Below, piece by piece: positions 11,250-47,073 of a stretch of DNA of 64,000 bases. The position numbers were made by a program, and so were the translations under genes. Each line of letters starts with the position of its first letter. Positions within the stretch are counted from its first letter, which is position 1. Source of the stretch: Macrostomum lignano (taxonomy: Eukaryota); NCBI GenBank assembly GCA_002269645.1, contig NIVC01000380.1, positions 310,001 to 374,000 of the forward strand. Direction: 5' to 3'. The notes below the pieces were generated by a model that saw only the letters and a program-made list of their open reading frames with translations, did no database searches and was not told the DNA's origin.

Positions 11250-12422
11250 TCACTGCCGAGGAATGTAGATGGCGTGAAGACGCGACTGCCAGGTCAGAAT
11301 GTCGGCATCAAACAGTCTGCGATCGCGCAGCCGCAGCCGCAGGCGGGACACGAACGGATAGAACCTTCGCAGACTGGCACACGTAGTCACCTTCTGTTCG
11401 CAACGAAACTTGTCGCTGTGAATCTCGAACAGGCAGCTGCTGTAGTAATTATCGCTGTAACCCTTCGCCAAGAACTCGTCCGGTTTATTCGGCGCCGCAA
11501 ACAGGTACGGCCCGAATGGGCGCTGGCTTAGCGGATAGACATCCGCCAGATCGAAGCTGAACTGCCACTCAGGCCGGTAGAAGTACTGGCCCAGTACCTT
11601 GCCAAAGAACAAGTCAACAGAGAAGCGACAGCGCTTGCTGTTGGGATTCGAAGAGTCAAGTCGTTGACAGAGAATGTCCAGCCGCCAGTGCTGATTAGTC
11701 TGTTCGGTATCAACAAATTGGAACTCATCCAGTTCGGACAGTTCGGTTAGCAGTTTGCGAACTTCGTACTTTTGATCCTCGCGGACCATGAAATCAACGT
11801 CGTCGTCCCACGGTATGACGCCAAAGTGTCGTCCAGATCCGATCAGACTGCCGTCCGTGAGGAAAAGCTCCAATCCTCGTTGGGAAAAATTCTGATTGAG
11901 CCTGTTTAGAAGATGGTATATCTTTGTCAGTTCGGCTTCGGAATACGATTGATTGAAACAACCAGTCAGGCCGGTCCCGAATTCCTTCTCTGTCAAGGAT
12001 GCATCGTCGGCATTTGAAAACAGGGCATTCTGACAAGCCAGCGACACACCGACGGGAGAGACGGGCTCCGCCAGTCTAACGTAGTTGGGCCCCTCGGAAA
12101 TTTTCAGTTGCTTCTCACTTTCTCGATTGTCGCCTATGCGAAGCAGTTTGAGCAGTGTCTCCGTGTCGTTGACGCAATCCTCTCGTCTCAGCATGCCCGG
12201 CGAGGGGGCGTCAACTCGGCCCGTCAGGTAGAGCATCAGGCGGTGCATGATGGAGCCGCACGACGGTACGCAACCGTTGTTGGAGAAGCTTCTGCCACCG
12301 CCGACTCCAAGCCTCCAAGACACCGCGACGCTGGCTAGCCGCAACTGCACCATCCAGTAGAAGACGACAAGGCCCGCTGTGCAGGTCAGCATTAGCGACA
12401 AACGCGACCACCTGCGGCCCAT
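11250..12422 (-). CDS. LicD/fukutin-related nucleotidyltransferase, predicted type II membrane protein, single exon, ~390 aa
   Basis: LicD motif DGSLIGSGRHFGVIPWDDDVDF; N-terminal hydrophobic anchor LSLMLTCTAGLVVFYWMV after basic residues; first ATG at 12422 (the track starts at an upstream TTG). Confidence 0.85.
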   Translation of the reverse strand: MGRRWSRLSLMLTCTAGLVVFYWMVQLRLASVAVSWRLGVGGGRSFSNNGCVPSCGSIMHRLMLYLTGRVDAPSPGMLRREDCVNDTETLLKLLRIGDNRESEKQLKISEGPNYVRLAEPVSPVGVSLACQNALFSNADDASLTEKEFGTGLTGCFNQSYSEAELTKIYHLLNRLNQNFSQRGLELFLTDGSLIGSGRHFGVIPWDDDVDFMVREDQKYEVRKLLTELSELDEFQFVDTEQTNQHWRLDILCQRLDSSNPNSKRCRFSVDLFFGKVLGQYFYRPEWQFSFDLADVYPLSQRPFGPYLFAAPNKPDEFLAKGYSDNYYSSCLFEIHSDKFRCEQKVTTCASLRRFYPFVSRLRLRLRDRRLFDADILTWQSRLHAIYIPRQ

Positions 12423-13360
12423 TTCGCGGTTGATGATAACCAATTTTTCAGCGTTTATTTCCAGCAAAAGCGGTGCGCATTGGCAAAAAGCCTGGTTACT
12501 AATACAGATGCTTCATTCTTGATCTACATGTACTGGTAGAGTTCTGGTCTGAATCTTTAACGGGTCTTAGAGGGAGAAAGAGCAACTCGACCGAACCAAC
12601 GCCCAGCCAATCAGGCACAGCCGACCAAGCGAACAAAGTCGGAGCGCTGGAAATGCTTGACAGAACTAGCCGGCATAACATCAGACAGATGTTTATGTGA
12701 TAGCTGGGTTTATTTGTGTCACACCATGTGTCCTGACGCATCAACTGAGAGTTTAAAGTCAGAGAATTTTGCCATTGGCAATTAAATAGTCTGCATACTG
12801 GGATGGCCCTTACTGATAGGAGCTATTCTGCAAACATTTAAACTTTATAGTGCCCTGGGCGAGCTGGCAGAGCTAAAAAAGCACCAAATAAAAAATCTTT
12901 AGCAGGCCGACATACATATACCGGGTACGACGCAGAAAAGTCGCTGACTGGAGCAGATCGCGTACCACTAGATGCACATCTGTTGCCAGAAATTCGCGAA
13001 TCTGAGCCTACAGCCTACGATAGCCGGCTGTTGGCCAGAATTCAGTTCGGATTTTTCTCCCCCCAGCTGCCCAGCTCCCCAGATAGAGCAGTGGGAGAAT
13101 CCCCTTGCAAAGGCTCCGCTATCGTGGCAGCGTTCCAGGACCCGATAAATTGTTTATGAAGCTATCAGCACTGACTCGAACTGGGGTTTTGCGACGCACG
13201 CCGGAGAGCAGGCTTTGCGTGCTGTGCGAGGTTCAGTTCGAGGCATGGGACACGAACTCGGCTGCGGTACAGTAGGGGTCAGCATTCTAGACGGCCGCTG
13301 AAAGATAGATAGATAGATAAATAAATATTAGATAAATAAATATTAGATGGGTAGATATCA

Positions 13361-15744: not shown

Positions 15745-17440
15745 AATCCATAGTAGCTATAGATTAGCAATCCATTCTGTTTCTTAATCCATAGTAGATG
15801 TAGATGTAGATTAGCAATCCATTCTCTTTCTTAATAATCCATAGTAGATGTAGATTAGCAATCCATTCTATTCCTTAATCCATAGTAGATGTAGATTAGC
15901 AATCCATTCTATTCCTTAATCCATAGTAGATGTAGATTAGCAATCCATTATATTCCTTAAGCAATAGTAGATGTAGATTAGCAATCCATTCTATCCCTTA
16001 ATCCATAGTAGATGTAGATTAGCAATCCATTATATTCCTTAAGCAATAGTAGATGTAGATTAGCAATCCATTCTATTCCTTAAGCAATAATAGATGTAGA
16101 TTAGCAATCCATTCTATTCCTTAATCCTTAGTAGATGTAGATTAGCAATCCATTATATTCCTTAATCCATAGTAGATGTAGATTAGCAATCCATTCTATT
16201 CCTTAAGCAATAGTAGATGTAGATTAGCAATCCATTCTATTCCCTAAGAAATAGTAGATGTAGATTAGCAATCCATTCTATTCCTTAATCCTTAGTAGAT
16301 GTAGATTAGCAATCCATTATATTCCTTAAGCAATAGTAGATGTAGATTAGCAATCCATTCTATTCCTTAAGCAATAGTAGATGTAGATTAGCAATCCATT
16401 CTATTCCTTAATCCTTAGTAGATGTAGATTAGCAATCCATTATATTCCTTAATCCATAGTAGATGTAGATTAGCAATCCATTCTATTCCTTAATCCTTAG
16501 TAGATGTAGATTAGCAATCCATTCTATTCCTTAATCCATAGTAGATGTAGATTAGCAATCCATTCTATTCCTTAAGCAATAGTAGATGTAGATTAGCAAT
16601 CCATTCTATTCCTTAAGCAATAGTAGATGTAGATTAGCAATCCATTCTATTCCTTAAGCAATAGTAGATGTAGATTAGCAATCCATTCTATTCCTTAAGC
16701 AATAGTAGATGTAGATTAGCAATCCATTCTATTCCTTAAGCAATAGTAGATGTAGATTAGCAATCCATTCTATTCCTTAAGCAATAGTAGATGTAGATTA
16801 GCAATCCATTCTATTCCTTAAGCAATAGTAGATGTAGATTAGCAATCCATTCTATTCCTTAAGCAATAGTAGATGTAGATTAGCAATCCATTATATTCCT
16901 TAAGCAATAGTAGATGTAGATTAGCAATCCATTCTATTCCTTAAGCAATAGTAGATGTAGATTAGCAATCCATTATATTCCTTAAGCAATAGTAGATGTA
17001 GATTAGCAATCCATTATATTCCTTAAGCAATAGTAGATGTAGATTAGCAATCCATTCTATTCCTTAAGCAATAGTAGATGTAGATTAGCAATCCATTACA
17101 TTCCTTAAGCAATAGTAGATGTAGATTAGCAATCCATTCTATTCCTTAAGCAATAGTAGATGTAGATTAGCAATCCATTCTATTCCTTAAGCAATAGTAG
17201 ATGTAGATTAGCAATCCATTCTATTCCTTAAGCAATAGCAGATGTAGATTAGCAATCCATTCTATTCCTTAAGCAATAGTAGATGTAGATTAGCGATCCA
17301 TTCTATTCCTTAAGCAATAGTAGATGTAGATTAGCAATCCATTCTATTCCTTAAGCAATAGCAGATGTAGATTAGCAATCCATTCTATTCCTTAAGCAAT
17401 AGTAGATGTAGATTAGCGATCCATTCTATCCCTTAATCCA
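15745..17440. repeat. 41-bp tandem array (cattctattccttaagcaatagtagatgtagattagcaatc), about 40 copies
   Basis: Head-to-tail units with no spacers; TTAATCC variant enriched on the left, TTAAGCA on the right. Confidence 0.95.
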
Positions 17441-17909: not shown

Positions 17910-18255
17910 GGTGACAGTGGTAGTGGAAATCGGGGTGACAGTGGAGTGAACATTGGGGTGACGGTAGAGTAACGTAGTGGACATCAGGGTGACAGTGGAG
18001 TGACAGTGGTAGTGGACATCAGTTTGACAGTGGAGTGACAGTGGTAGTGGACATCAGGGTGACAGTGGAGTGACAGTGGTAGTGGACATCAGGGTGACAG
18101 TGGAGTGACAGTGGTAGCGGACATCAGGGTGACAGTGGAGTGACAGTGGTAGTGGACATCAGGGTGACAGTGGAGTGACAGTGGTAGTGGACATCAGGGT
18201 GACAGTGGAGTGACAGTGGTAGTGGACATCGGGGTGACAGCGGAGTGGACATTGG
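17910..18255. repeat. 35-bp minisatellite (gacagtggagtgacagtggtagtggacatcagggt)
   Basis: Tandem units visible. Confidence 0.9.
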
Positions 18256-18841
18256 GGCGCTATTTCGCGGACATTATCATAAAAGCTGCAGCAAGGTGAA
18301 ACGTGATTAGCAGAAGATAGAAAAAATGCGCCAGCCACGAGCGAGTCACGGGCTAAATATAAACTGTCAAAAATGTTTTACTTCGTATTAACCTGGGGAC
18401 GCGGAGGGCACGGCCAGTGACTATATAATTAACAATTTTATTATTAGCAATAACAAGTAGTAGCTAAGGCATTTATTACAGCATACTGAATATTGGCACG
18501 GAACCATGGTTGCTAAAGTGATTCTTGCAACACTTCTTTCTTCGAGAGAGACAGGAGAGGAGATGGAGACAGGGGAAAGGAGAGAGTGGAGAGAGGAGAG
18601 AAGAGAGGAGAGAGGGGAAAGGGGGAGGAGAGGGAGAAGGGAGGTGGAGAGGAGGAGAGGAGAGGAGAGGGAGAGGAGAGAGGAGAGAGAGAAGGGAGGA
18701 CGGAGGGGGAGAGAGGAGACGGAGGGGGAGAGAGGAGACGGAGAGGAGAGGAGAGTGGGGAGGAGAGACGGAGAGGGGAGAGGAGGGAAGTGAGAGAGAT
18801 CAGAGAAGCGGGATTGCCATGTTAAAAGATTTCAAAAGACC

Positions 18842-19208
18842 CTAGGGCAGGATAGAGAGGCTTAGCGCGGGACTCTATGGCAGGATAGAGAGGCTTAGCG
18901 CGGGACTCTAGGGCAGGATAGAGAGGCTTAGCGCGGGACTCTATGGCAGGATAGAGAGGCTTAGCGCGGGACTCTAAGGCAGGATAGAGAGGCTTAGCGC
19001 GGGACTCTATGGCAGGATAGAGAGGCTTAGCGCGGGACTCTAAGGCAGGATAGAGAGGCTTAGCGCGGGACTCTAAGGCAGGATAGAGAGGCTTAGCGCG
19101 GGACTCTAAGGCAGGATAGAGAGGCTTAGCGCGGGACTCTAAGGCAGGATAGAGAGGCTTAGCGCGGGACTCTAAGGCAGGATAGAGAGGCTTAGCGCGG
19201 GACTCTAC
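18842..19208. repeat. 33-bp minisatellite (taaggcaggatagagaggcttagcgcgggactc), about 11 copies
   Basis: Tandem units; source of the ESRAKPLYPAL ORF. Confidence 0.92.
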
Positions 19209-19351
19209 CGTCTCTGGTGCAGAAGAAACGCTTGTGGAACCAGAAAAGCGCAACTTAAATTTGGCCAGGGAACCGAACCGGGCACACCAATATGAACAGA
19301 AAATGCAAACGGAAAAAACATTTGTCAGTTTAATTGATTTAATGAATTCAT

Positions 19352-22300
19352 CTAAGAGGCCAGAAATCTTCTTATGCCGAGATCGCGCCTAGCGCTCAGG
19401 CCGCAGCCGCCGGTCAGCAGCTGGGACAACCCGTTGGCCAGCGACAGCTCGCTACGACGCTGCCAAGGCGTCAACGATTCTTCAATTCGACCGTCGATTA
19501 AGCCGAACAATTCGTCGCCGGCGAATCGGCGAGAGACGCCGAGACGTCGAATCAGCTCGTCTGGACGCTGTTTGACGCGTTGACAGTCGGGCGGCGTCGG
19601 CGGAGGCGACGGGGCCAGTAGGTGCCAATCGACGCCAAGACAACGCAGCGCGCTCTGATGCCGCGGGTGTCGCGGCGACAAGCTGGAATCTTTGACTGTA
19701 TCATCGGCGTCGTCGACATTCGAAGGCGACATTGGCAGCGGCGAAGTTTCGACGTCGGACACCGGGACGGCGTCGGCTAGAAGGGTCTCTTCGATGCCAG
19801 GCATGGCGTAACGCTGAGGCGCCAGACGATACTCTTCGTCCAGTGACGACGGAGGCGGCAAAGGCGGCTGGACGGCGCGACTGTCGATTTGACGGCGTCG
19901 ACGTTTGATGACAGCGGCGGCGTCTGGTTGCGGCAGAATTCGGCGAACCAGACGGTCGAGGAGCCACGCGTCGCTGCTACCATTGGCGGCGGAGTGACGG
20001 TCCAAGCTGTCGCTGCGGATTGCGAAGGGGTGAGATAGGAGTTTTAAAGGGTGAGATTGGAGTTTGAAAAGGTGAGATAGGAGTTTGAAGGGGTGAGATA
20101 GGGGTTCTAAAGGGTGAGATTGGAGTTTGAAAGGGTGAGATTGGTGTTTGAAAGGGTGAGATTGGAGTTTTAAAGGGTGAGATTGGAGTTTGAAAGGGTG
20201 AGATTGGTGTTTGAAAGGGTGAGATTGGTGTTTGAAGGGGTGAGATTAGAGTTTGAAAGGGTGAGATTGGAGTTTGAAAGGGTGAGATTGGAGTTTGAAA
20301 GGGTGAGATTAGAGTTTGAAAGGGTGAGATTGGTGTTTGAAAGGGTGAGATTGGTGTTTGAAAGGGTGAGATAGGAGTTTGAAGGGGTGAGATAGGGGTT
20401 CTAAAGGGTGAGATTGGAGTTTGAAAGGGTGAGATTGGTGTTTGAAAGGGTGAGATTGGAGTTTTAAAGGGTGAGATTGGAGTTTTAAAGGGCGAGATTG
20501 GAGTTTGAAAGGGTGAGATTGGTGTTTGAAAGGGTGAGATTGGAGTTTGAAAGGGTGAGATTGGTGTTTGAAAGGGTGAGATTGGTGTTTGAAGGGGTGA
20601 GATTAGAGTTTGAAGGGGTGAGATTGGAGTTTGAAAGGGTGAGATTGGAGTTTGAAAGGGTGAGATTAGAGTTTGAAAGGGTGAGATTGGTGTTTGAAAG
20701 GGTGAGATTGGTGTTTGAAAGGGTGAGATTGGTGTTTGAAGGGGTGAGATTGGTGTTTGAAGAGGTGAGATTGGCGTTTGAAAGGGTGAGATTGGTGTTT
20801 GAAGTGGTGAGACTGGTGTTTGAAGGAGTGAGAATGGTGTATGAAGGGGAGATTGATGTTTGAAGGGGAGATTGATGTTTAAAGAGGTGAGATTGATATT
20901 TGAAGGGTCATATTGGTATTTAAGAGGTGAGATTACAGTTTAAAAGGAGTGGTGAGATTTGTGTTTGAGGTATTAAGGGGATTTGGTGCTATGTTTGGAT
21001 GCACGATTAGCGTCTTAAGATTAGTGCTCAGGGGCAAGAGAGTGAGGCTATCTTTACTGAGTATCCCTGAGCCGGAGACTTACCCGCTATCGCTTCCGTC
21101 GCTGCCATCCCGGCTCAAATCGCTAACTGAGCTGCTGCCGCTCTGAAGCAGCAGCCTCCGACGCCGCCTGCTCTGGCCGTCGGCTTCAGCGGCGATGGCT
21201 TGGCGCGCCCGACGGGCGCTGGACGTTGCAGTTGACGAGCTTTCAGACACTTTCCTGCGGTGCTTGGAGTCCCTGATTCGGCTGCGCTCCCGACTTCGGT
21301 TCCGACTTCGATCCCGACTTCGGTTTCGACTTCGATCCCCACTTCGGTTGCGACTTCGATCCCGACTTCGATCTCGACTTCGGTTGCGACTTCGATCCCG
21401 ACTTCGGTTGCGACTTCGATCCTGACTTCGGTTGCGACTTCGATCCCGACTTCGGTTGCGACTTCGATCCTGACTTCGGTTGCGACTTCGATCCCGACTT
21501 CGGTTTCGACTTCGATCCCGACTTCGGTTCCGACTTCGGTTCCGACTTCGGTTTCGACTTCGATCCCGACTTCGGTTCCGACTTCGATCTCGACTTCGGT
21601 TCCCACTTCGATCTCGACTTCGGTTCCGACTTCGATCTCGACTTCGGTTCCGACTTCGATCCCGACTTCGGTTGCGACTTCGATCCCGGTCCCGATCTAG
21701 ACTTCGATTTTGAGTTCTATCACGATCCTGACTTCGGTCACGTTCACGGTCCCGACTTCGATCACGTTCACGGTCCCGACTCCGATCACGATCACGTTCA
21801 CGGTCCCGACTCCGATCACGATCACGTTCACGGTCCCGACTCCGATCACGATCACGTTCACGGTCCCGACTTCGATCACGATCACGGTTCCGACTAGTGT
21901 TTAGAATAACGTCCTGACTTCGATTATGACCATGATCAGGACTGTGATCCGGACTTTGATCATGGTTTAAGCCCCGACCTTGATTCTCTGCTCGAATAGC
22001 TAATCGATCGTGGCTTTCATCACCTTGACAGTTTTCTTTAGATTCTTTGACATCTTGGCGGTCGACACTATTAACTTTGTCTTGATCTTCGATGTCATGA
22101 CAAGTTTCAACAAACTGTTTATGGTTGATGTCTTGAGGTCCTGCTTCGTTGCCGCTGTACATAGCAATCTGCTCCAGATTCGTTGCATCGTAATTATCCA
22201 TTCGATCCTCCGCTTCGTTCGGCTCAAGCTTCACCTCTCGGCGCGTACTTTGATCTTTAACTTGTTCCCGGTTTTTCTGTAGACATTCTGGCCACTCCTT

Positions 22301-24208
22301 TTCACTTTGGGTGTCATTCGGCTTGATTTTCTTGTCTTCGTGTTCACAACTTCGAGTATAGACATGCTCACTGTTTCTAGACCTTTGTTCATCATGATTC
22401 TGGCTTTCAACGTTCACTTGCTCAGTTTCTTTCTTTTTTCGTTCAGTTTGATCTTTGCTTTGATTGTCTACATTATCGCTGCTCTTGTCTTTGCGATCGC
22501 GACTATGGGTGTCCACCTTGTCGCTGCTCTTGTCTTTGCGATCGCGACTTTTGGTTTCCACCTTATCGCTATTCTTGTCTTTGCGATCGCGACTTTTAGT
22601 GTCTACCTTATCGCTGCTCTTGTCTTTGCGATCGTGACTTCGGGTGTCCCCTTTATCGCCGCTCTTGTCTTTGCGATCGCGAATTTGGGTGTCGACCTTA
22701 TCGCTATTCTTGTCTTTGCGATCGCGACTTTGGGTGTCCACCTTATCGCTATTCTTGTCTTTGCGATCGCGACTTTGGGTGTCCACCTTATCGCTATTCT
22801 TGTCTTTGCGATCGTGACTTCGGGTGTCCCCTTTATCGCCGCTCTTGTCTTTGCGATCGCGAATTTGGGTGTCGACCTTATCGCTATTCTTGTCTTTGCG
22901 ATCGCGACTTTGGGTGTCCACCTTATCGCTATTCTTGTCTTTTCGATCGTGACTTCGGGTGTCCCCTTTATCGCCGCTTTTGTCTTTGCGATCGCGAATT
23001 TGGGTGTCGACCTTATCGCTATTCTTGTCTTTGCGATCGTGACTTCGGGTGTCCCCTTTATCGCCGCTTTTGTCTTTGCGATCGCGACTATGGGTGTCCA
23101 CCTTGTGGCTGCTCTTGTCTTTGCGATCGCGACTTTCGATTTCCATTCTTCCACCTTTGTTATCCTTGTGTTTAGCAAGATCAAACTCGAGGTCCTCCTG
23201 GTCATTGCCTTTCTCTTTGTGCTTACTATGAGAGTCCTTTTGTTTACTGATTTTATCACTGTGCTTACCGCGATCATCACTTTGACTGTCCACTTTGTCA
23301 CTGCTCTTGTCTGCGCGTTCATCTTGTTCACGACTTCTAGACTCGACTTTTCTACTGTTCTTATCTTTGCTTTGATCTTTATCGCTACGTTGGCTGTCTA
23401 CCTGTTTACTGTTCGTACATTTGAGCTCAACTAGATTGAGAGTTTCAGAACTTATTTCTTCGACACAGTCTTCGGATGAAATTGCAACTGTACCTGACAG
23501 CTGGTGGCTATTAAGCGTCTCAGGTTCAGGTTGGCTAACGCTTTTAACAGGAATTGCATCGAGTTGACTGCTTCTAGGCAGTTCATCAGCTTGCAGCTGG
23601 TTTTTACTATTTGGCTCAGTGGCTTGCAAATGCTGCAAGTCATCGGCACAGTTCTGAGCGTTGAGCGACTCCCATTCTGGATCAACCAGCATCAACTCAT
23701 CCTGAGGCGGCTCCAGCTCATCTTCATCGCTATCGCTGCTATCTTCGTCCTCTACAACTGATTGATCTTTTTCAACGCGCCGTTTGCGATCCTTTTTCTC
23801 GTCGCTTTTAGATCGCTTCGCTTTCTTGGCGGATTTCTTGTGACTTGACTTTTTCTTTTTCTTCTTTTTTTCCGAAGGCGACGGGTGTTCGACTTTGGAA
23901 TTTTTCGACTTTTTAATATCGCCGCTACCGCTTAAGCCGCCGCCGTCAGTTCTGCGCCGCTTCTCCCGCGGCCTTGATCTGTCGTCGTCAGCGTCTAGAG
24001 TACGACGCGGCGCCGTTGGCGACAAGGATCGATCCTTACCAGTTGATTTCTTTGCTTTCAAATCGTCTTTAACTTTTGTCTGACGCTCTTCATGACGCTG
24101 GTGATGGTGGCGATGATGAGATGACGATCGTGGATTGGTGGGTGACGACGAATGGCCGATGCGCGATTCGCGACGCGAAGACTTGTCTTTGTCCGGCTTG
24201 CCCGACAT
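19352..24208 (-). CDS. ZC3H13: RS/RD-repeat nuclear protein with a ZC3H13/Flacc-like C-terminal domain, 2 exons, 1261 aa
   Basis: Exon 24208-21084 ends GG|GTAAGT; exon 20012-19352 follows ccgcAG; phase 2 joins the 1042-aa and 217-aa ORFs (3786 nt). The C-terminus VDWHLLAP..PDELIRRLGVSRRFAGDELF..CGLSARRDLGIRRFL resembles, from memory, ZC3H13 LDWSGLMP..PGAVMLRVGISKKLAGSELF..CKALCFRRDSAIRKQL. The CDS is secure; orthology is less so. Confidence 0.7.
20027..20960. repeat. 21-bp minisatellite (gggtgagattggagtttgaaa) filling the ZC3H13-like intron
   Basis: Array starts about 13 nt from the acceptor; intron is 20013-21083. Confidence 0.93.
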
Positions 24209-24607: not shown

Positions 24608-25231
24608 GGTTTATGTAACAGGGCATATTGTGAATCAATCGTGACAACAAACAGACCTAACCGTATTTCAGTAAAGATAGTCAGTAGTATGCAACAAGAC
24701 AGATGCCGCATGATCTATTATGCACTTATTTAAATGATTAAACATATCAAAAACAGTAGGTAGACTTGAATAAGAACATATAGGAGAGAAATTCACAATC
24801 ACAATGCCACATTCACGTATACTGAAGCGTAAAAAGTGAATTATTCTGCAGCATGTCAATTTTTTATTGAAAAAAGAGAAAGTTTCTTCGATAATAGTAA
24901 AACTGCATTTATTATGACAGCTTTGAGACACATAATGAAGATTCTCATACAAAAAACACGCTAATGAGTTTATTAAAAGTTTTGTCATAGTTTTTTCATA
25001 CTGCGCTGATGGTAACTTTTAAAAGTTGCGTACATCCTTGAGGGCGGGTGATGTACAGACAAGCGTAGCTTACATCCTTGAGGGCGGGTGAGGTGCAGAC
25101 AAGCGTAGCTTACATCCTTGAGGGCGGGTGAGGTACAGACAAGCGTAGCTTACATGCTTGAGGGCGGGTGAGGTACAGACAAGCGTAGCTTACATGCTTG
25201 AGGGCGGGTGAGGTGCAGACAAGCGTAGCTT

Positions 25232-27861
25232 CCCGACCGGAAATAATTGTTCTTTAAATGCGTCAAATAGCACATAAAAAATGAATTGGGGGGAATCCCA
25301 AAATAACTGTCGAAACGACACGAAATTTGTGAGAATCGACAATTGGTGGCACAGCTTGGCACAAATATAACTGTGCCAAGCTGTGCCAATTGGCACATGT
25401 GACACAATTAAGAATCAAATTTTTAATTGTGCACTGCTGTGCCACAACTGTGCCAGTTGTCTCAGCTATTTTTGAGTGCTTATAATTGTGCACAACTGTG
25501 CCATAAATGTACCATTTGGCACCATACGAGTAAATGTGCAGCTAGAAGCAGTTAAACTAGCGCGTACTGTGCCATTTGGCGTAAATTCGCCAGACGAGTG
25601 AATTTGCAGTTTAAAGCAGTTGAACTAAGCGCATAATGTTCTATCTGATGCTGTTACAGTTGACCCGTTAGTCAACTACGAGTTATGAAGTGTATGAAGT
25701 AGCTAAGATTTGCGAGAGGTCCTTCTCATGTTTAAATGAGGGAAGACAAATTGAAAAGAGTTGTTAATGTAAATTTAACTTTAAAATGTTAAGCGCGAAC
25801 ATAAACAGATTAAAACAGTTGGAAAAAGGGATGTTGCATAAATACGTATATATTTAATGGGAAGTAGCAAATAGGACAAAAAACATGTATAAAACAGGAA
25901 AAAGGGGAGGCTGCGGAATTAAAAAATGCATACTAGAAGTTAACGGAAAGAAACATAACAGACAGCGGACATTGGACAGGAAACAAAAAACAACGTAATT
26001 AAAAAGCGCGGTGCATGAAAATTGTGGTGCCAGCCAAAGAGTTTACACTTCTAATACATTTGAAACCAAAACATGCAATGTAACAAATTAACTACTGAGT
26101 CGACTACACGTGGCACAGGATTTTAATGTAACAACATGTATACATCTAATAATGTATTAATTTAAAAAGCACAAACAAACAACTAGATAAAAAACAAGCA
26201 ATTAGTGAAACCAACTCCAATACCTCTGTTCCCCTATACTTTTCTAGTTAGACAACAAGTCTGATTCCTGGTGCTATTGTAATTTACGAGTCTGGAACTA
26301 ACTATAGTAATGTAGTTGGTTACTTTATGTGGGAAAGAGCATATTTCCAGGGGAAAACAAAACCAGAGACATGAGGGAGACAGGCCAAGCTAGACGGGTC
26401 CCGCATCTGCCAAACAAGTTTAGTTTTGCTAGATGCAACAGCAGATATCCCGCGCTCAGTCCTCGCGAGTGCATTAGCCGCCTCCGACTGCACAGTGTCA
26501 GTGACATTGGCAGCCGCACCTTGACGAAGTTTCTTTACAGGCAAACGTCCGGATTGCTTTTCACGCCGACTGACGGTGATGGAGCATCGGACGTAGGCCT
26601 TTTCAATCGCATTCATTGGTTGGGATGTCGATTCCAGCCAGGTAGCAGGCGTGGCCGACCAGGCTCAGTAGCGCGACCGCTCAACGACGTTACCAAAATC
26701 TCGTCGTCGCTGAAGCACGCCCGCACCATCTCGCGGAGAAGTGCATTGAGGTTGGCCGGAGTCGTTGGTTTTTTGATATATCCTTACTGGCCGTGACCCT
26801 GGTCCGAGCGACGTTGGACGTAAAGGCAAAACCGATTGGCTGCAGAGGTGTTTTTAAGGATTGAAGAGCGTTTGAGAGTAACAATAGGATATTTGCGCGA
26901 TCATAAATGAAGGACTATTAATTTCTTACCGTAGTATAATTTCTTTCCATTGTCGTCGACCAGCATGTTGTCAACTGTGACGGCTGGGTCCACGAGCTGA
27001 TCTAGATGGACGGCGAAATGCTGCGTAATCTGCTGCTTTAGTTCTTTTGTAATGGCGTCAATCAAACGCGGTTGCGCCATTTTCGAGCGTCTGAGCAGAT
27101 CATGCCGCAAGTTGGGAGTGAAAACCTGCCGGTCATCTGCCGAAATCGAAGCTACTGACGTCGCAGCCTCAGTGCAAGTTGCACCAGGTGTGTGCCAAAT
27201 AGTTTTGTTAGTAATTAGCAATAAAAAAGGTTATTTGAGCCAAGTGTGCCAAGAAGGACAAATACATATAACTGTGCCAATTATGTCATAGCTGTGGCAC
27301 AACTGGTACAATTGTAGCAAGTGTGCCAAGTGTGCCAGTCTGTTTTAATAACCAATTAGCTATAAAAAGGATATTCGTGCCAAGTGTGCCAAGAAGGACA
27401 GTCCAAGACATATACAACTGTGTCAAATAGTATAGCTGTGGCACAACTGGTACACTTGTAGTAAGTGCGCCAAGTGTGCCAAATGGTTTCCAAGGGGAAT
27501 TAGCTATAAAAAGGTTATTTGTGCCAGGTGTGCCAAATGGGACATACAAAGACATTTATAACTGTGCTAAATGGTATGGCTGTGGCACAACTGGCACAAT
27601 TGTAGCAAGTGTGTTAAGTGTGCCAATTGGTTTCATTGGCCAATTAGCAGTAAAAATACTATTTGTGTCAAGTGTGCCAAATAGGACATACATCGACATT
27701 TACAAACTGTGCCAAATGGCATAGCTACGGCACAATTGGTACAATTGTATCAAGTGTGCCAAATATGACATACAAAGACATTTATAACTCTGTCAAAGGG
27801 CATATTTGTGGCACAACTGGCACACTTACTGTTTTTGAAAGGACAAATATTTTCGGTCGGG
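25232..27861. mobile_element. Non-autonomous DNA transposon, CMC/EnSpm-like, 2630 bp
   Basis: Terminal inverted repeats (TIRs) CCCGACCGGAAATAATTGTTCTTTAAA and CCCGACCGAAAATATTTGTCCTTTCAA match 23/27; TT TSD at 25230-31 and 27862-63; many subterminal GGCACA/TGTGCC motifs at both ends. Confidence 0.85.
26320..27080 (-). pseudogene. Decayed two-exon gene with a BEN-domain-like segment inside the CMC-like element
   Basis: Exon 27080-26930 (G|GTAAG) joins in phase to an exon starting at 26839; in-frame TAA at 26784-86; then LNALLREMVRACFSDDEILVTSLSGRATEPGRPRLL, resembling the BEN core; then a frameshift into ORF 26320-26616. Confidence 0.5.
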
Positions 27862-29598
27862 TTACATCCTTGAGGGCGGGTGAGGTGCAGACAAGCGTAG
27901 CTTACATCCTTGAGGGCGGGTGAGGTGCAGACAAGCGTAGCTTACATCCTTGAGGGCGGGTGAGGTGCAGACAAGCGTAGCTTACATCCTTGAGGGCGGG
28001 TGAGGTACAGACAAGCGTAGCTTACATGCTTGAGGGCGGGCGAGGTACAGACAAGCGTAGCTTACATCCTTGAGGGCGGGTGAGGTGCAGACAAGCGTAG
28101 CTTACATCCTTGAGGGCGGGTGAGGTGCAGACAAGCGTAGCTTACATCCTTGAGGGCGGGTGAGGTGCAGACAAGCGTAGCTTACATCCTTGAGGGCGGG
28201 TGAGGTACAGACAAGCGTAGCTTACATCCTTGAGGGCGGGTGAGGTGCAGACAGGCGTAGCTTACATCCTTGAGGGCGGGTGAGGTACAGACAAGCGTAG
28301 CTTACATGCTTGAGGGCGGGTGAGGTGCAGACAAGCGTAGCTTACATCCTTGAGGGCGGGTGAGGTACAGACAAGCGTAGCTTACATCCTTGAGGGCGGG
28401 CGAGGTACAGACAAGCGTAGCTTACATGCTTGAGGGCGGGTGAGGTGCAGACAAGCGTAGCTTACATCCTTGAGGGCGGGTGAGGTGCAGACAAGCGTAG
28501 CTTACATCCTTGAGGGCGGGTGAGGTGCAGACAAGCGTAGCTTACATCCTTGAGGGCGGGTGAGGTACAGACAAGCGTAGCTTACATCCTTGAGGGCGGG
28601 TGAGGTGCAGACAAGCGTAGCTTACATCCTTGAGGGCGGGTGAGGTACAGACAAGCGTAGCTTACATCCTTGAGGGCGGGCGAGGTACAGACAAGCGTAG
28701 CTTACATCCTTGAGGGCGGGTGAGGTACAGACAAGCGTAGCTTACATGCTTGAGGGCGGGTGAGGTACAGACAAGCGTAGCTTACATGCTTGAGGGCGGG
28801 CGAGGTACAGACAAGCGTAGCTTACATCCTTGAGGGCGGGCGAGGTACAGACAAGCGTAGCTTACATCCTTGAGGGCAGGTGAGGTACAGACAAGCGTAG
28901 CTTACATCCTTGAGGGCGGGTGAGGTACAGACAAGCGTAGCTTACATCCTTGAGGGCGGGCGAGGTACAGACAAGCGTAGCTTACATCCTTGAGGGCGGG
29001 CGAGGTACAGACTTGAGGGTACAGACGTAGGGTAAGGTACAGACAAGCGTAGCTTACATCCTTGAGGGCGGGCGAGGTACAGACAAGCGTAGCTTACATC
29101 CTTGAGGGCAGGTGAGGTACAGACAAGCGTAGCTTACATCCTTGAGGGCGGGTGAGGTACAGACAAGCGTAGCTTACATGCTTGAGGGCGGGCGAGGTAC
29201 AGACAAGCGTAGCTTACATCCTTGAGGGCGGGCGAGGTACAGACAAGCGTAGCTTACATCCTTGAGGGCAGGTGAGGTACAGACAAGCGTAGCTTACATC
29301 CTTGAGGGCGGGTGAGGTACAGACAAGCGTAGCTTACATCCTTGAGGGCGGGCGAGGTACAGACAAGCGTAGCTTACATCCTTGAGGGCGGGCGAGGTAC
29401 AGACTTGAGGGTACAGACGTAGGGTAAGGTACAGACGTAGCTTACATCCTTGAGGGCATTCCTTATTTTAATAGTTCTATTGCTAGTTATAAATAGACAA
29501 AGCATACTGAAAAATACACTTTGCATTAGTGATCGCATATATCTTTTATGATAATCAGCTTCAGTAAGATGTGCATTAATCTAGTCCAACAATTTGTT

Positions 29599-30147
29599 TT
29601 AAACTGCTTTCTTATATTCGATTCGTTCAACTGACACATCGTCCAACAGCTTGTAGACGTAACAGACCACGGTGGCAGCCTGAATGTCTAGCAGGGCAAA
29701 GGACGGCACAGACTCACACTGGGTAGGCGAGAAAGCACCTGTAGCGCTGCCGGGATTCAAAAAGAATCTGCCATCCTTTTCGAACGCCTCAAACCGGTGC
29801 GTATGACCGCTAATAACAATATCAGCGCCTAGTTGGCGTTGTAGAGCGCTCAATGGGGCCGCGTCGCCCCACGGGATCAGCTGGTGACCGTGGGTGACGC
29901 CGATTTTAAACTGGCCAACTGTCACAACTTTAGTATCGGGCCATTGGGCATTGTCGTCGAATTCGCCGCGGACAATGTGCACATCGGTGGCTAGAGATTT
30001 CAAATAGTCGTACATATCCCGGCTAGACAGATTGCCGGTGCATAGAATGTGCTGAATTTTGCCGGGCACCAATAGCTTTTTAAATTTGGCTGGCAAAGCC
30101 TGCGCTCTGTAGGGCACATGGAAATCGCCGATAACTAATACCAGCAT
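29599..30147 (-). CDS. VPS29: Vacuolar protein sorting 29 (retromer subunit), 182 aa, intronless CDS
   Basis: [52 protein letters not shown]; length matches the canonical 182 aa from the ATG at 30147. Confidence 0.97.
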
Positions 30148-30336
30148 TGCGACGGCGGCTGTACTGACTGGGCAGGTGCGATCCAAACAAACTAAACAAG
30201 AATTTTCCCGTAAATTTGCTGCTTTTTTGGATAGCACTGAAACCATCAATTCACAAGCAAATATCTTTAAAACACGACGTTTTACGATTGTTTTTTAGAA
30301 ATAAAAACCAATTTATTTTGCTTTAATATCAATCAA

Positions 30337-31162
30337 AGATGGAAGATGGTGAACGGATGGATAAATATGGTGATCGCATAGATGGAGATGGTGAACGGAA
30401 AGATGGAGATGGTGAACGGATAGATGGAGATGGTGAACGGAAAGATGGAGATGGTGAACGGAAAGATGGAGATGGTGAACTGAAAGATGGAGATGGTGAA
30501 CGGAAAGATGGAGATGGTGAACGGATAGATGGAGATGGTGAACGGAAAGATGGAGATGGTGAACGGAAAGATGGAGATGGTGAACGGAAAGATGGAGATG
30601 GTGAACGGATAGATGGAGATGGTGAACGGAAAGATGGAGATGGTGAACGGAAAGATGGAGATGGTGAACGGAAAGATGGAGATGGTGAACGGAAAGATGG
30701 AGATGGTGAACGGATAGATGGAGATGGTGAACGGAAAGATGGAGATGGTGAACGGAAAGATGGAGATGGTGAACGGAAAGATGGAGATGGTGAACGGAAA
30801 GATGGAGATGGTGAACGGATAGATGGAGATGGTGAACGGAAAGATGGAGATGGTGAACGGAAAGATGGAGATGGTGAACGGAAAGATGGAGATGGTGAAC
30901 GGAAAGATGGAGATGGTGAACGGATAGATGGAGATGGTGAACGGAAAGATGGAGATGGTGAACGGAAAGATGGAGATGGTGAACTGAAAGATGGAGATGG
31001 TGAACGGAAAGATGGAGATGGTGAACGGATAGATGGAGATGGTGAACGGAAAGATGGAGATGGTGAACGGATAGATGGAGATGGTGAACGGAAAGATGGA
31101 GATGGTGAACGGAAAGATGGAGATGGTGAACGGATAGATGGAGATGGTGAACGGATAGATGA
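30337..31162. repeat. 21-bp minisatellite (gatggagatggtgaacggaaa), about 39 copies
   Basis: Tandem units; source of the DGDGERK, SPSPSFR and FTISIFP ORFs. Confidence 0.95.
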
Positions 31163-31949
31163 AGTGAAAAGTCGACCCATTAACAGAGATAAAAACAAGC
31201 GAGCACACAGAGTACAGTATAGGCCCATCCAAAACTACCACCATTAGGCAGCATCACCCCACAGTGACTATGTATATAATATCTATAGAAAATTCAACTA
31301 AAAGCAAAACTTTCCAGAATCGGGGGCACTCCGGCCCTCCCCAGATTCCCCAAAAGAGGAGAGCGCCCGCGCACAAGCACACAATCACAACGACCCTTTC
31401 GTCAATGCGATCAATAAAATTTGATACCAAACTGCCAGCAGATTAAGCGATTTGGGGAAGGGAAAACGGAAGAGAGAGAAGGCGGGAAAAGGGAAAACCA
31501 TGAGCAAAAATCGAGGACGAAAAAGTTTTTCTCCCCAAAACTCCAACGGGTTGCTGGGAGAAACTTAGCTAGCTACTAAGTAAAAATAAAGCACAGTGGG
31601 TCGCCGGGCAGATGGGGACAACAGACGCAATTCGCAGCATATAGCCGCCGGGACAATTAGAGGTCAAAGAGCAAAGCCTCCAATTCCAAGTTCCAGACCA
31701 GACAGCTGTTCCCTGGGCTGTGGATACCCCAAAAAGCAAGCAGACGACCGCACCCGCATGCAGATAAGATCGAGAGGCAAAAAAATCGAAAAAAGAGAGA
31801 AAATCAGATTGGTTCGAAGCGTCGGGTTCTGCATACCAATTGGCAACACGGCTCTAACCTCGAATAAGCTATGAGCTCAATTCCAAGCTGTCTGCCCTCC
31901 TCCCAAAAATGCTAGAAGAAAAATTTCTATACTTTTCTATCTACAGTAG

Positions 31950-38600: not shown

Positions 38601-39050
38601 TTTTACCTGCTAACTGTGTCAATGCAGAGGCCACTCTGGCTGCAATGGAGGCATTCAATGAGTACAGCTTCTTTCTGGAGCCAGTCGCAATATGCGCTTA
38701 GCTGAATTTGAATGCTGGCAAGCATTCTGTAGGAGCCTGCCATCAGCTGAGCAAAGTACCATGACCATCTCCAACAGGACCAACATAATCAAGCACTGCA
38801 ATAAGGGTCTTTGGCCAAACATCCATGACCTACTGACGATCTTTCTCACCATCCCAGTGGCAACCTGCACAGCTGAAAGATCATTTAGTATGCTTTGTTT
38901 TTTGAAGACACATACCAGGTCAACCATGGGCAAGAGCCGGCTGAATGGACTTGCAATGCTGTAAGTGCACAAAGACATTCAACTGCCATACAAGCGTGTG
39001 GTTGAGGAATATTCACAGCATTTCGACTTGCGCCTGCGGCTGTTGTAATT
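35670..39050 (+). pseudogene. hAT transposase pseudogene (TTF-type zinc finger, DUF4371, catalytic core, hATC dimerisation domain)
   Basis: VFCLPCVLF, LRGH*E (TGA at 36502), YTRLSP|AVQNTLI, IVDGTSD, QGYDGASVM, HCSSHCLNL, PTRF, IPVATCTAERSFS; has frameshifts, stops and one insertion. Confidence 0.9.
36661..37357. mobile_element. Foldback/MITE-like element, probably MULE-related, inserted in the hAT transposase
   Basis: About 280-bp inverted arms built from gcccgc subrepeats around an AT-rich loop; flanking direct repeat (c)ctttcacct of 8-10 bp, boundary ambiguous; removal restores L-S-P-A-V-Q-N. Confidence 0.85.
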
Positions 39051-41664: not shown

Positions 41665-44951
<3,287 letters not shown>

Positions 44952-45665: not shown

Positions 45666-47073
45666 CAGGGGTCAGCAAACTTTTTACCTCAAGGGCCAGA
45701 TTGAGAACAGCGCAGGACTGCCCTTCTTGGTCCGCTTTGCTGGGCCCCCTAAGAAGACTGCGGGCTATAGGGAGACAGGATAAGGAATAGAGAAGAGAAA
45801 TACGAGCGCAGGAGAAAGGAGAGGCGAAGGATTAAATGAGAAGAGAGTAGACGAGAAGAGAGATAAAATAGGAGAGGAGAGAGGAGAGGGGAGATGAATG
45901 AGGAGAGGAGAGTCGAAATATAAGAGAGAGGAGGGAGAAGAGAATGGAGATGAAACGGGAGATGAGAGGAGAGGAGAGAGGAGAGGAGAGGAGAGGAGAA
46001 GAGAGGAGAGGAGAGGAGAGGAGAGGAGAGGAGAGGAGAGGAGAGGAGAGGAGAGGAGAGGAGAGGAGAGGAGAGGAGAGAGGACAGGACAGGAGAGGAG
46101 AGGAGAGAACAGGACAGGAGAGGAGAGGAGAGGAGAGGACAGGAGAGGAGAGGACAGGAGAGGAGAGGAGAGGAGAGGAGAGAGAGGAGAGGAGAGGAGA
46201 GGAGAGGAGAGGAGAGGAGAGGAGAGGAGAGGAGAGGAGAGGAGAGGAGAGGAGAAGAGAGGAGAGGAGAGGAGAGGAGAGGAGAGGAGAGGAGAGGAGA
46301 GGAGAGGAGAGGAGAGGAGAGGAGAGGAGAGGAGAGGAGAGGAGAGGAGAGGAGAGGACAGGAGAGGAGAGGAGAGGACAGGAGAGGAGAGGAGAGGACA
46401 GGAGAGGAGAGGAGAGGAGAGGAGAGGAGAGGAGAGGAGAGGAGAAGAGAGGAGAGGAGAGGAGAGGAGAGGAGAGGACAGGAGAGGAGAGGAGAGGACA
46501 GGAGAGGAGAGGAGAGGAGAGGAGAGGAGAGGAGAGGAGAGGAGAAGAGAGGAGAGGAGAGGAGAGGAGAGGAGAGGAGAGGAGAGGAGAGGAGAGGAGA
46601 GGAGAGGAGAGGAGAGGAGAGGAGAGGAGAGGAGAGGACAGGAGAGGAGAGGAGAGGAGAGGAGAGGAGAGGAGAGGAGAGGACAGGAGAGGAGAGGAGA
46701 GGAGAGGAGAGGAGAGGAGAGGAGAGGAGAGGAGAGGACAGGAGAGGAGAGGAGAGGACAGGAGAGAACAGGAGAGGAGAGGAGAGGAGAAGAGAGGAGA
46801 GGAGAGGAGAGGAGAGGAGAGGAGAGGAGAGGAGAGGAGAGGAGAGGAGAGGAGAGGACAGGAAAGGACAGGAGAGGACAGGAGAGGAGAGGAGAGGAGA
46901 GGAGTTTATGAGCAGAGAGAGGGGAGGGAAGAGTGCTGAGAAGAGACGCGAACATCGAGCGGGATGGATTGTTGCTATTGATAGCGGAAGATTCAAATTA
47001 AGGACCCAAGTGCCGGATAGAGAGGCTTTGCGGGCCACATTTGGTCTTCAGGCCGGAGTTCGCCAAACCCCTG
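45666..47073. mobile_element. Nested non-autonomous hAT-Charlie-like element
   Basis: Ends CAGGGGTCAGCAAAC and CAGGGGTTTGGCGAAC with subterminal gggcc motifs; TSD ttttagtg/ttttagta (7/8). Confidence 0.8.
45880..46910. repeat. ~1-kb (GGAGA)n microsatellite with GGACA variants
   Basis: Seen directly; source of the SSPLL and ERRGE ORFs. Confidence 0.97.

What the first reader, a model, noticed from the sequence alone, without database searches (positions are those of the whole stretch)
19352..24208. Hidden ZC3H13/Flacc-like m6A-writer subunit lacking an obvious zinc finger
The two ORFs look like low-complexity noise until spliced across a satellite-filled intron. The last ~100 aa then match my recollection of the conserved ZC3H13/Flacc C-terminus, which bridges WTAP/Fl(2)d and RBM15/Nito in the m6A writer complex (established). 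No CCCH finger is visible at the N-terminus, as in Drosophila Flacc. Divergent orthologs like this are easily missed and could be scored as gene loss.
Basis: partly seen in the sequence, partly recalled or inferred. Interest (0 to 1): 0.7.

Follow-up and report, generated by a model that had tools for sequence, protein, structure and literature searches.

The report
Flatworm ZC3H13/Flacc-like m6A-writer scaffold gene
The two low-complexity reading frames are one real two-exon gene of the flatworm Macrostomum lignano, and the last 100 residues of its product match the conserved C-terminal VIRMA-docking ("Barding") domain of ZC3H13/Flacc, so it is a divergent, zinc-finger-less and C-terminally shortened member of a known m6A-writer subunit family.

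Summary

- **Source and gene model.** The window is Macrostomum lignano contig NIVC01000380.1. Minus-strand ORFs 21080-24208 and 19352-20005 join in frame through a consensus GG|GTAAGT...CGCAG|C intron (20013-21083). The intron is filled by a 21-bp satellite. The product is 1261 aa.
- **Support for the model.** Public transcript-based models join the same two ORFs at two other copies of the locus. At this locus the public model is a 391-aa stump.
- **Negative single-sequence searches.** Pfam, 5.8 billion clustered proteins and 1.84 billion cluster representatives all found nothing.
- **Positive targeted and profile tests.**
  - phmmer of the last 101 aa against PDB gives ZC3H13 (7VF2_B) as best hit, E 0.0014.
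  - A profile of 6 vertebrate and 3 divergent, probably invertebrate, ZC3H13 C-termini (no Macrostomum sequence) matches residues 120-218 of exon 2: hhalign probability 96.3%, E 1.8e-9.
  - The same profile picks this ORF alone out of 2451 six-frame segments: E 2.5e-8, next best 0.65.
  - Two motifs are colinear: LGVDW...RLGVSRRFAGDELF and LSARRDLGIRRFL.
- **Differences from the family.** There is no CCCH finger. About 19 residues are missing mid-domain. The terminal helix is absent. The aromatic WTAP-contact position is Gln.
- **Function.** A role in m6A writing is inferred, not shown.

It is a new member of a known family, of modest interest.

The parts
21084..24208 (-). Exon 1 coding sequence. 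It runs from the ATG at 24208 for 1041 codons plus 2 nt. The product is an R/S/D/K-rich low-complexity region with no CCCH finger.
   Evidence: ORF. An in-frame stop lies 9 nt upstream of the ATG. The whole protein is 60% R+S+D+K+E and has no Cys in the first 186 aa. Against homeolog L001 the first 1069 nt are 98.0% identical with no indels, and dN/dS is 0.41 versus 0.91 and 0.97 out of frame.
22458..23136 (-). Coding 45-bp tandem repeat (15.1 copies), encoding 15-aa units of the type SRDRKDKNSDKVDTQ.
   Evidence: Tandem Repeats Finder; translation. ORF lengths differ among the three copies (1042, 1046 and 1064 aa), consistent with in-frame repeat-number changes.
21290..21895 (-). Coding 24-bp and 30-bp tandem repeats, encoding RDRSRNRS and RDRERDRDRS arrays (Arg-Asp/Arg-Ser dipeptide repeats, as in ZC3H13).
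   Evidence: 21290-21688 with period 24; 21720-21895 with period 30; translation.
20013..21083 (-). Phase-2 intron of 1071 nt. The donor is GTAAGT and the acceptor is a pyrimidine tract followed by CGCAG.
   Evidence: The identical splice-site sequences are present in L001 and L003. Against L001 the non-satellite part of the intron is 96.2% identical with 10 gap columns in 136 nt.
20024..20947 (.). 21-bp satellite (44 copies, consensus GAAAGGGTGAGATTGGAGTTT on the + strand) that fills the intron.
   Evidence: It sits at the same place in the L001 and L003 introns with different copy numbers.
19352..20012 (-). Exon 2 coding sequence: 1 nt plus 219 codons plus the TAG stop at 19352-19354.
   Evidence: Against L001 it is 98.8% identical with no indels.
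19358..19654 (-). Barding-like domain, exon-2 residues 120-218. This is the segment homologous to human ZC3H13 residues ~1491-1608.
   Evidence: hhalign aligns 95-97 columns; hmmsearch; phmmer against PDB. Fifteen columns are invariant across the window sequence, 3 divergent (probably invertebrate) and 9 vertebrate sequences.
19496..19648 (-). Motif 1: LRCLGVDWHLLAP...PDELIRRLGVSRRFAGDELFGLI. It corresponds to human LDVIDVDWSGLMP...PGAVMLRVGISKKLAGSELFAKV, the start of the Barding domain including helix alpha1.
   Evidence: BLASTP 19/53 identical, pairwise E 8e-8; HMMER domain 1.
19361..19399 (-). Motif 2: LSARRDLGIRRFL. It corresponds to LSARRDLAIRRHL in the divergent (probably invertebrate) fragments and LCFRRDSAIRKQL in human.
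19329..19343 (-). Two ATTAAA polyadenylation-signal variants 9-24 nt after the stop codon. They mark exon 2 as the terminal exon.
   Evidence: Read directly from the sequence. Public gene calls in L001 and L003 end at this stop.

Best explanation
This is a two-exon gene of Macrostomum lignano that encodes a 1261-aa divergent homolog of ZC3H13/Flacc, the scaffold subunit of the regulatory half (MACOM) of the m6A mRNA methyltransferase. The first ~1140 residues are an intrinsically disordered R/S/D/K-rich region. The last 100 residues are a shortened version of the family's conserved C-terminal 'Barding' domain. By analogy with the human complex (PDB 7VF2), these C-terminal helices would lie along the ARM-like repeats of the VIRMA ortholog and stabilise the WTAP-VIRMA core. 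The disordered region would supply RNA and RBM15/Nito contacts and nuclear-speckle targeting. Shown here: the gene structure, its maintenance in three copies, and sequence homology to the Barding domain. Inferred only: VIRMA binding, complex membership and any effect on m6A.
For: - Gene model: consensus splice sites join the ORFs in frame. The same structure exists at L001 and L003, where public gene calls span both ORFs. That annotation was built with RNA-seq guidance (PMC5730564).
- Constraint: exons are 98.0-98.8% identical to homeolog L001 with no indels. The flanks and intron are 96-97% identical with 10-56 gap columns. In-frame dN/dS is 0.41 for the first 1069 nt of exon 1, against about 0.9-1.0 out of frame.
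- Homology, pairwise: BLASTP against human ZC3H13 residues 1461-1668 gives 37 bits, E 8e-8. That human sequence was verified 100% identical to 7VF2_B.
- Homology, database: phmmer of the last 101 aa against all of PDB ranks 7VF2_B first, E 0.0014.
- Homology, profile: hhalign gives 93.4% (vertebrate profile) and 96.3%, E 1.8e-9 (profile without Macrostomum). hmmsearch of that profile against 2451 six-frame segments scores 30.9 bits, E 2.5e-8, with the next best at 0.65. The maximum of 5000 shuffles is 8.9 bits, against 32.2 bits for the real sequence.
- Motifs: two are colinear, and LSARRDLGIRRFL matches LSARRDLAIRRHL in the divergent fragments at 11 of 13 positions.
- Architecture: R/D/S repeats precede the domain, as in human ZC3H13 (my own recollection of its sequence) and in the contig that carries P0115.
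- Residue changes: the three amino-acid differences from L001 within the domain all avoid the 15 invariant columns.
- Precedent: zinc-finger-less orthologs exist in Diptera and Ciona (PMC5900714). Planarians have a working m6A writer with METTL14 and KIAA1429/VIRMA (PMC9627665).
Against: - Single-sequence searches found nothing at database scale: Pfam, a word-indexed search of 5.8 billion proteins, and phmmer against 1.84 billion representatives.
- phmmer of the whole exon 2 against PDB did not list ZC3H13.
- In one search an unrelated protein (OutC) scores almost as well (E 0.0038), through the Pro-rich linker plus part of motif 1.
- The domain is incomplete. About 19 residues (human ~1556-1574) are absent. 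The protein stops 2 residues after motif 2, so the stretch after motif 2 (human ~1609-1643, including the terminal helix alpha8) is missing. No exon for it was found.
- Human F1521, Trp in the divergent fragments, is a WTAP contact. It is Gln here (PMC9652331).
- The AlphaFold2 model is low-confidence (pLDDT 55.7), and Foldseek found nothing.
- dN/dS for the last 100 codons cannot be interpreted because there are only 4 substitutions.
Confidence: 0.75

Rival explanations
1. The gene descends from ZC3H13 but no longer works, or works differently, in the m6A writer. Loss of the terminal helix, the mid-domain deletion and the F-to-Q change could have weakened VIRMA/WTAP docking, leaving a generic RS/RD-rich nuclear protein.
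For: The protein stops right after motif 2, and no tail exon exists in the window. The aromatic WTAP-contact position is Gln. In the last 100 codons there are 3.5 nonsynonymous against 0.5 synonymous differences from the homeolog.
Against: Both core motifs and all 15 family-invariant columns are kept. None of the differences between homeologs touches them. All three copies keep the frame without indels. There are too few substitutions to claim relaxed selection.
Confidence: 0.15
2. It is an unrelated SR/RD-type low-complexity protein, and its C-terminal similarity to ZC3H13 is chance.
For: Database-wide single-sequence searches were empty. An unrelated PDB protein scores similarly to ZC3H13. 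Identity to human is only about 34-36% over about 95 columns.
Against: Two separate motifs occur in the right order at the extreme C-terminus behind an RD/RS-rich region. The profile E-values are 1.8e-9 and 2.5e-8. No shuffle out of 5000 exceeds 8.9 bits, against 32.2 bits for the real sequence. The match improves when the three divergent, probably invertebrate, family members are added to the profile.
Confidence: 0.07
3. The gene model is wrong: the two ORFs belong to different transcripts, or the long ORF is a non-coding by-product of tandem repeats.
For: At this very locus the public gene call covers only 22442-24199 (391 aa). Tandem repeats hold open several overlapping ORFs on both strands.
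Against: Public models at both other copies run from the same ATG region to the exon-2 stop. The non-repetitive parts of exon 1 are also open and free of indels between homeologs, with in-frame dN/dS below the out-of-frame controls. The splice sites are consensus and conserved.
Confidence: 0.03

Closest known systems
Human ZC3H13 (Barding domain, residues 1492-1643; PDB 7VF2 chain B)
   Same: Both have a long R/D/E/S-rich disordered body followed by a conserved C-terminal helical segment. Motif 1 (VDW..L.P...R.G.S...AG.ELF) and motif 2 (L..RRD..IR..L) are colinear. It is the best PDB hit.
   Different: The flatworm protein has no N-terminal CCCH finger. It lacks about 19 residues mid-domain and the roughly 35 domain residues after motif 2, including the terminal helix alpha8. 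F1521 corresponds to Gln. It is 1261 aa against 1668 aa.
Drosophila Flacc/Xio (CG7358)
   Same: It is a zinc-finger-less ZC3H13 ortholog that is only weakly similar to the mammalian protein (21% identity) and still functional in the m6A writer (PMC5900714). The flatworm protein has the same overall layout. The Barding domain is reported to be conserved in flies (PMC9652331).
   Different: The Flacc sequence itself was not available here, so no direct alignment was made. Whether Flacc keeps the terminal helix that the flatworm protein lacks was not checked.
Unnamed divergent ZC3H13-like C-termini P0115, P0118 and P0127 (Logan assemblies; taxon unknown, probably invertebrate)
   Same: They carry LGVDW..L, LGVS..FAG..L and ALSARRDLAIRRHL, and an RD-rich ORF lies upstream on the same contig. 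They are the closest sequence match to motif 2.
   Different: They keep Trp at the WTAP-contact position. They have a longer acidic insert mid-domain. They also have a 28-31-residue tail with the final helix (D.ELL..A..LF.RCL), which the flatworm protein lacks.

Membership tests
ZC3H13/Flacc | Barding-domain motif 1 (..VDW..L.. then R.G[VIL]S...AG..L) | tested here: met
   LGVDWHLLAP...RRLGVSRRFAGDELF. V, D, W, L, G, S, A, G and L are invariant across 13 sequences.
ZC3H13/Flacc | Barding-domain motif 2 (AL..RRD.AIRR.L), placed C-terminal to motif 1 | tested here: met
   GLSARRDLGIRRFL (ALSARRDLGIRRFL in homeolog L001), colinear with motif 1.
ZC3H13/Flacc | Significant profile match of the C-terminus to the family | tested here: met
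   hhalign 96.3%, E 1.8e-9. hmmsearch E 2.5e-8 against 2451 segments, with shuffles reaching at most 8.9 bits against 32.2 bits. PDB best hit 7VF2_B, E 0.0014.
ZC3H13/Flacc | Complete Barding domain, including the terminal helix alpha8 (D.ELL..S.RLF) that stacks on the VIRMA Chest domain | tested here: not met
   The protein stops 2 residues after motif 2. There is no GT donor between the RRDL codons and the stop codon. A tail-only HMM finds nothing on the minus strand downstream of the gene. ATTAAA signals follow the stop.
ZC3H13/Flacc | Conserved WTAP-contact residues of helix alpha1 (human R1512, F1521) | tested here: not met
   The F1521 column is Trp in the three divergent (probably invertebrate) fragments and Gln in the flatworm protein. 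R1512 falls in an alignment gap (residues named in PMC9652331).
ZC3H13/Flacc | Long R/S/D/E-rich low-complexity region upstream of the C-terminal domain | tested here: met
   R 16.3%, S 14.5%, D 14.4%, K 9.3% and E 6.0% of 1261 aa, with RDRS/RNRS arrays.
ZC3H13/Flacc | N-terminal CCCH zinc finger (gives the family its name; absent in Diptera and Ciona, so not universal) | tested here: not met
   No CCCH pattern in any minus-strand frame of the window. There is no Cys in the first 186 aa. An in-frame stop lies 9 nt upstream of the ATG. A finger split by an intron, or lying beyond the window, is not excluded.
ZC3H13/Flacc | Acidic [YF]E.IS[DE][DE]EL[DE]E patch just upstream of the Barding domain | tested here: inconclusive
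   MAFFT aligns MSPSNVDDADDTV with YEPISDDELDEIL, with 3 of 11 identical in the core PSNVDDADDTV/PISDDELDEIL. The profile alignments do not extend into it.
ZC3H13/Flacc | Reciprocal best hit: no better ortholog elsewhere in the genome | not testable with these tools
   No searchable copy of the M. lignano genome or proteome was available. The large protein databases evidently lack even the public 1019-aa and 1202-aa models of this gene.
ZC3H13/Flacc | Physical association with WTAP/VIRMA/RBM15 and requirement for mRNA m6A | not testable with these tools
   This needs co-immunoprecipitation, multimer modelling with the flatworm partners, or RNAi with m6A quantification.

The most novel reading that the evidence does not exclude
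Macrostomum, and perhaps flatworms generally, run the m6A writer with a minimal ZC3H13. It has no zinc finger, no terminal helix alpha8 and no aromatic WTAP contact. If so, helices alpha1-alpha6 would be the sufficient VIRMA-docking core. Lineages now scored as lacking ZC3H13 would then deserve a profile-based re-search.
Probability: 0.3. Interest if true: 0.5.

Novelty: new member of a known kind. Interest (0 to 1): 0.35.

Why it matters
ZC3H13 is the least conserved subunit of the m6A writer. It is reported absent from nematodes and was not found in plants. The planarian m6A papers I read name ZC3H13 only as a generic writer component and report no flatworm ortholog (PMC9627665, PMC10542940). 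No paper in the searchable library pairs ZC3H13 with Platyhelminthes.

A recognisable flatworm ortholog has three uses:
- It gives a knock-down target in a transgenic and RNAi-tractable regeneration model.
- It shows which parts of the Barding domain survive extreme divergence.
- It illustrates how repeat-rich genes with satellite-filled introns are truncated in annotation and then counted as gene losses.

It does not change what is understood about the complex.

Tried and rejected
- Pfam on both ORFs gave nothing, apart from a sub-threshold KIX hit at E 0.17. The precomputed Pfam field is also empty for the genuine ZC3H13 C-terminal fragments, so the negative says nothing.
- Single-sequence searches of exon 2 found no hits among 5.8 billion clustered proteins or 1.84 billion representatives. 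The first search also did not return the public Macrostomum models, which points to database incompleteness as well as divergence.
- phmmer of the full exon 2 against PDB gave no ZC3H13 hit. Only the trimmed last 101 aa did.
- An exact-sequence look-up of the spliced 1261-aa protein found it absent from the collection.
- AlphaFold2 of the last 129 aa with a 13-sequence alignment gave pLDDT 55.7 and pTM 0.24, predicting four helices. Foldseek against PDB returned only a meaningless E 9.3 hit. This is expected for a domain that is ordered only on VIRMA, and I dropped it as evidence either way.
- dN/dS on exon 2 alone rests on 8 substitutions and is uninformative.
- The search for a missing 3' exon encoding the terminal helix used a tail-only HMM (an earlier run, crashed after a motif regex printed no match) and found nothing on the gene's strand downstream.
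- The search for a CCCH finger in all six frames found only a spurious antisense match inside the repeats.
- I did not try to recover the exact public 1019-aa and 1202-aa products. Their shortfall against the full splice (263 and 60 aa) probably reflects collapsed coding repeats, but this is untested.
Full report
**Where the window comes from**

The intronless VPS29 gene at 29602-30147 (-) is an exact match to a protein of NCBI assembly GCA_002269645.1. Locus L002 from contig NIVC01000380.1 is 100% identical to window 19599-40225 over 20,627 bases. GCA_002269645.1 / NIVC00000000 is the Mlig_3_7_DV1 assembly of the free-living flatworm Macrostomum lignano (PMC11641670; PMC5730564). That genome is more than half repetitive, with 15% simple and tandem repeats, and its assembly is highly redundant. 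The species is a hidden polyploid (abstract of PMC10468722). This explains both the satellite-rich window and the extra copies of the locus described below.

**The observation**

Two minus-strand ORFs lie exactly where stated: 21080-24208 (1042 aa) and 19352-20005 (217 aa). Reading the sequence:
- Exon 1 ends ...GAT AGC GG at 21084, followed by GTAAGT.
- A pyrimidine-rich tract ends in CGCAG at 20013.
- Exon 2 starts with C at 20012, which completes a Gly codon and continues in the frame of the second ORF.

A script confirmed a single open frame of 3786 nt, or 1261 aa. The 1071-nt intron is nearly all a 21-bp satellite (20024-20947, 44 copies). Two ATTAAA signals follow the stop codon within 24 nt, which fits a terminal exon.

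**Independent support for the gene model**

The assembly holds two more copies of the locus. Both lie downstream of VPS29 and FAM228, as in the window.
- L003 (NIVC01004941.1) is nearly identical to the window.
- L001 (NIVC01000084.1) is a homeolog whose flanks are about 90-93% identical.

Both have the same two ORFs, the same donor and acceptor sequences, and the same satellite in the intron. Public gene calls span both ORFs: L003 13106-17860 with a 1202-aa product, and L001 11876-16500 with a 1019-aa product. That annotation was genome-guided by RNA-seq (PMC5730564).

At the window's own locus the public call covers only 22442-24199 and gives a 391-aa product without the conserved C-terminus. 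The gene is therefore hidden here, but not at the other two copies. None of the three products has a Pfam hit on record.

**Coding constraint**

Window compared with L001:

| Segment | Length | Identity | Gap columns |
|---|---|---|---|
| First part of exon 1 | 1069 nt | 98.0% | 0 |
| Exon 2 | 661 nt | 98.8% | 0 |
| 5' flank | 1000 nt | 96.0% | 56 |
| Non-satellite intron | 136 nt | 96.2% | 10 |
| 3' flank | 144 nt | 97.0% | 24 |

Nei-Gojobori dN/dS is 0.41 for the exon-1 segment, against 0.91 and 0.97 in the two wrong frames. It is 0.51 for both exons combined. Exon 2 alone has only 8 substitutions and cannot be tested. ORF lengths differ among the three copies (1042, 1046 and 1064 aa), and the frame is kept in all.

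**Homology to ZC3H13/Flacc**

Simple searches failed:
- Pfam.
- phmmer of the whole exon 2 against PDB.
- A word-indexed search of 5.8 billion proteins.
- A full phmmer scan of 1.84 billion cluster representatives.

I then recalled the human ZC3H13 C-terminus and verified it against PDB. It is 100% identical to 7VF2 chain B residues 356-563, which is human 1461-1668.

Targeted and profile tests succeeded:
- BLASTP of exon 2 against that segment gives 37 bits, pairwise E 8e-8, with 19 of 53 identical over LRCLGVDW...AGDELFGLI. A second, weaker colinear match lies near the end.
- The human fragment retrieved vertebrate orthologs. Their profile matches exon-2 residues 120-218 with hhalign probability 93.4%, E 2.5e-7.
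- As an HMM, that profile picks this ORF alone from 2451 six-frame segments of the window: E 3.6e-5, next best 2.5.
- A profile search (the profile included the window sequence) added three divergent C-termini: P0115, P0118 and P0127. They are 27-30% identical to human, with database E-values from 5e-17 to 4e-12. P0115 sits downstream of an RD-rich ORF on its contig. Their taxon is unknown, but they look invertebrate.
- These fragments carry ALGVDWASL, LGVS.KFAGE.L and ALSARRDLAIRRHL. The flatworm's LSARRDLGIRRFL matches the last motif at 11 of 13 positions.
- A profile of 6 vertebrate plus these 3 sequences, without any Macrostomum sequence, gives hhalign 96.3%, E 1.8e-9 over 97 columns. By hmmsearch it gives 30.9 bits, E 2.5e-8, with the next best at 0.65. 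The maximum over 5000 shuffles of exon 2 is 8.9 bits, against 32.2 bits for the real sequence.
- phmmer of only the last 101 aa against all 177,635 distinct PDB sequences ranks 7VF2_B first at E 0.0014. An unrelated protein (OutC) follows closely at 0.0038, so this test alone is weak.
- In a 13-sequence alignment, 15 columns are invariant from flatworm to human. The three amino-acid differences between the two homeologs in this region avoid all of them.

**What the domain is, and what is missing**

The cryo-EM paper defines residues 1492-1643 as the eight-helix 'Barding domain'. It is the most conserved part of ZC3H13, including in flies. It wraps VIRMA over an interface of about 4435 Å². It touches WTAP only weakly, through R1512 and F1521 (PMC9652331).

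The flatworm segment aligns to about 1491-1608, with these differences:
- About 19 residues corresponding to human 1556-1574 are absent.
- The protein stops 2 residues after motif 2, so the stretch after motif 2, including the terminal helix alpha8 (D.ELL..S.RLF), is missing.
- There is no GT donor between the RRDL codons and the stop.
- A tail-only HMM finds nothing downstream on that strand.
- In fish genomic ORF fragments the matching sequence breaks off directly after ...RRQLLKNDK/KNEK, which suggests an intron there. Loss of a last exon is therefore a plausible but untested history.
- The F1521 column is Trp in the three divergent fragments and Gln in Macrostomum.

**The zinc finger**

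No CCCH pattern exists in any minus-strand frame of the window. The first 186 residues have no cysteine. An in-frame stop lies 9 nt upstream of the ATG. All three public models start within a few codons of that ATG. Flacc and Ciona ZC3H13 also lack the finger (PMC5900714), so its absence does not bar membership.

**Structure prediction**

AlphaFold2 on the last 129 aa gave four helices at low confidence (pLDDT 55.7). Foldseek against PDB gave nothing usable. This is uninformative for a domain that is ordered only on its partner.

**Verdict**

This is a divergent ZC3H13/Flacc-family gene, shortened at the C-terminus and lacking the finger. Its role in m6A writing is inferred from homology only. 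Planarians do have an active writer that requires METTL14 and KIAA1429 (PMC9627665). The planarian m6A papers I read mention ZC3H13 only as a generic writer component, and I found no paper that names a flatworm ZC3H13. I could not test whether a better ortholog exists elsewhere in the genome. It is a new member of a known family, useful for flatworm epitranscriptomics and as a caution about inferring gene loss, but not a new kind of system.

Noticed in passing
window 22442-24199 (-): The public gene call at this locus is a 391-aa stump that ends inside the coding 45-bp repeats. The same gene at two other copies is called at 1202 and 1019 aa, both shorter than the full 1262-1283 aa expected. 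Coding tandem repeats appear to be collapsed or treated as introns in the annotation.
   Followed up: partly
window 29602-30147 (-): An intronless, complete VPS29 gene (182 aa, Metallophos_2). The public model at this locus and at L003 is a 208-aa N-terminally extended version (P0046). The 182-aa form is called at homeolog L001.
   Followed up: partly
window 19874-19960 (-), exon-2 residues ~14-42: AWLLDRLVRRILPQPDAAAVIKRRRRQ gives weak sub-threshold hits to the CBP KIX domain (Pfam E 0.17; PDB E 0.8-1.4). This is probably noise, but it lies in a non-repetitive segment that is conserved between the homeologs.
   Followed up: no
window 41851-44862 (+): A 1003-aa ORF with reverse-transcriptase and RNase H domains. 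I read it as a non-LTR retrotransposon copy with an intact long ORF.
   Followed up: partly
window 36017-38701 (+): Fragments that look like a domesticated or decayed transposase. One ORF carries DUF4371; the others have no Pfam hit. The hAT/ZMYM1-like assignment is my own impression. They are split over several ORFs.
   Followed up: partly
window 11250-12467 (-) and 4817-5362 (-): A 405-aa ORF of the LicD family and an exon of a PHO4/PiT-type phosphate transporter. These are neighbouring host genes.
   Followed up: partly
window 17000-17436, 17935-18255, 18838-19207, 25031-25231, ~27860-29400, 30330-31250, 45750-47040, 49570-51690: Many distinct tandem arrays flank and separate the genes. Measured periods are 41, 35, 33 and 40 bp, with offsets of about 40 bp at ~27860-29400 and 21 bp at 30330-31250 in self-BLAST. 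Several hold open long spurious ORFs in multiple frames on both strands. Copy numbers differ between the three copies of the locus.
   Followed up: partly
window 23650-23730 (-), protein residues ~160-186: The N-terminal stretch DSDEDELEPPQDELMLVDPEWESL loosely resembles the family's acidic patch plus VDW motif (FEEISDEELEEE...LGVDWASL). It did not score with the family HMM.
   Followed up: no
protein databases: All ZC3H13 hits returned were fragments of at most 371 aa. Full-length human ZC3H13 and the public 1019-aa and 1202-aa Macrostomum products never appeared. The large protein collections seem to lack long low-complexity proteins, which weakens any 'no homolog found' result for this kind of gene.
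   Followed up: no
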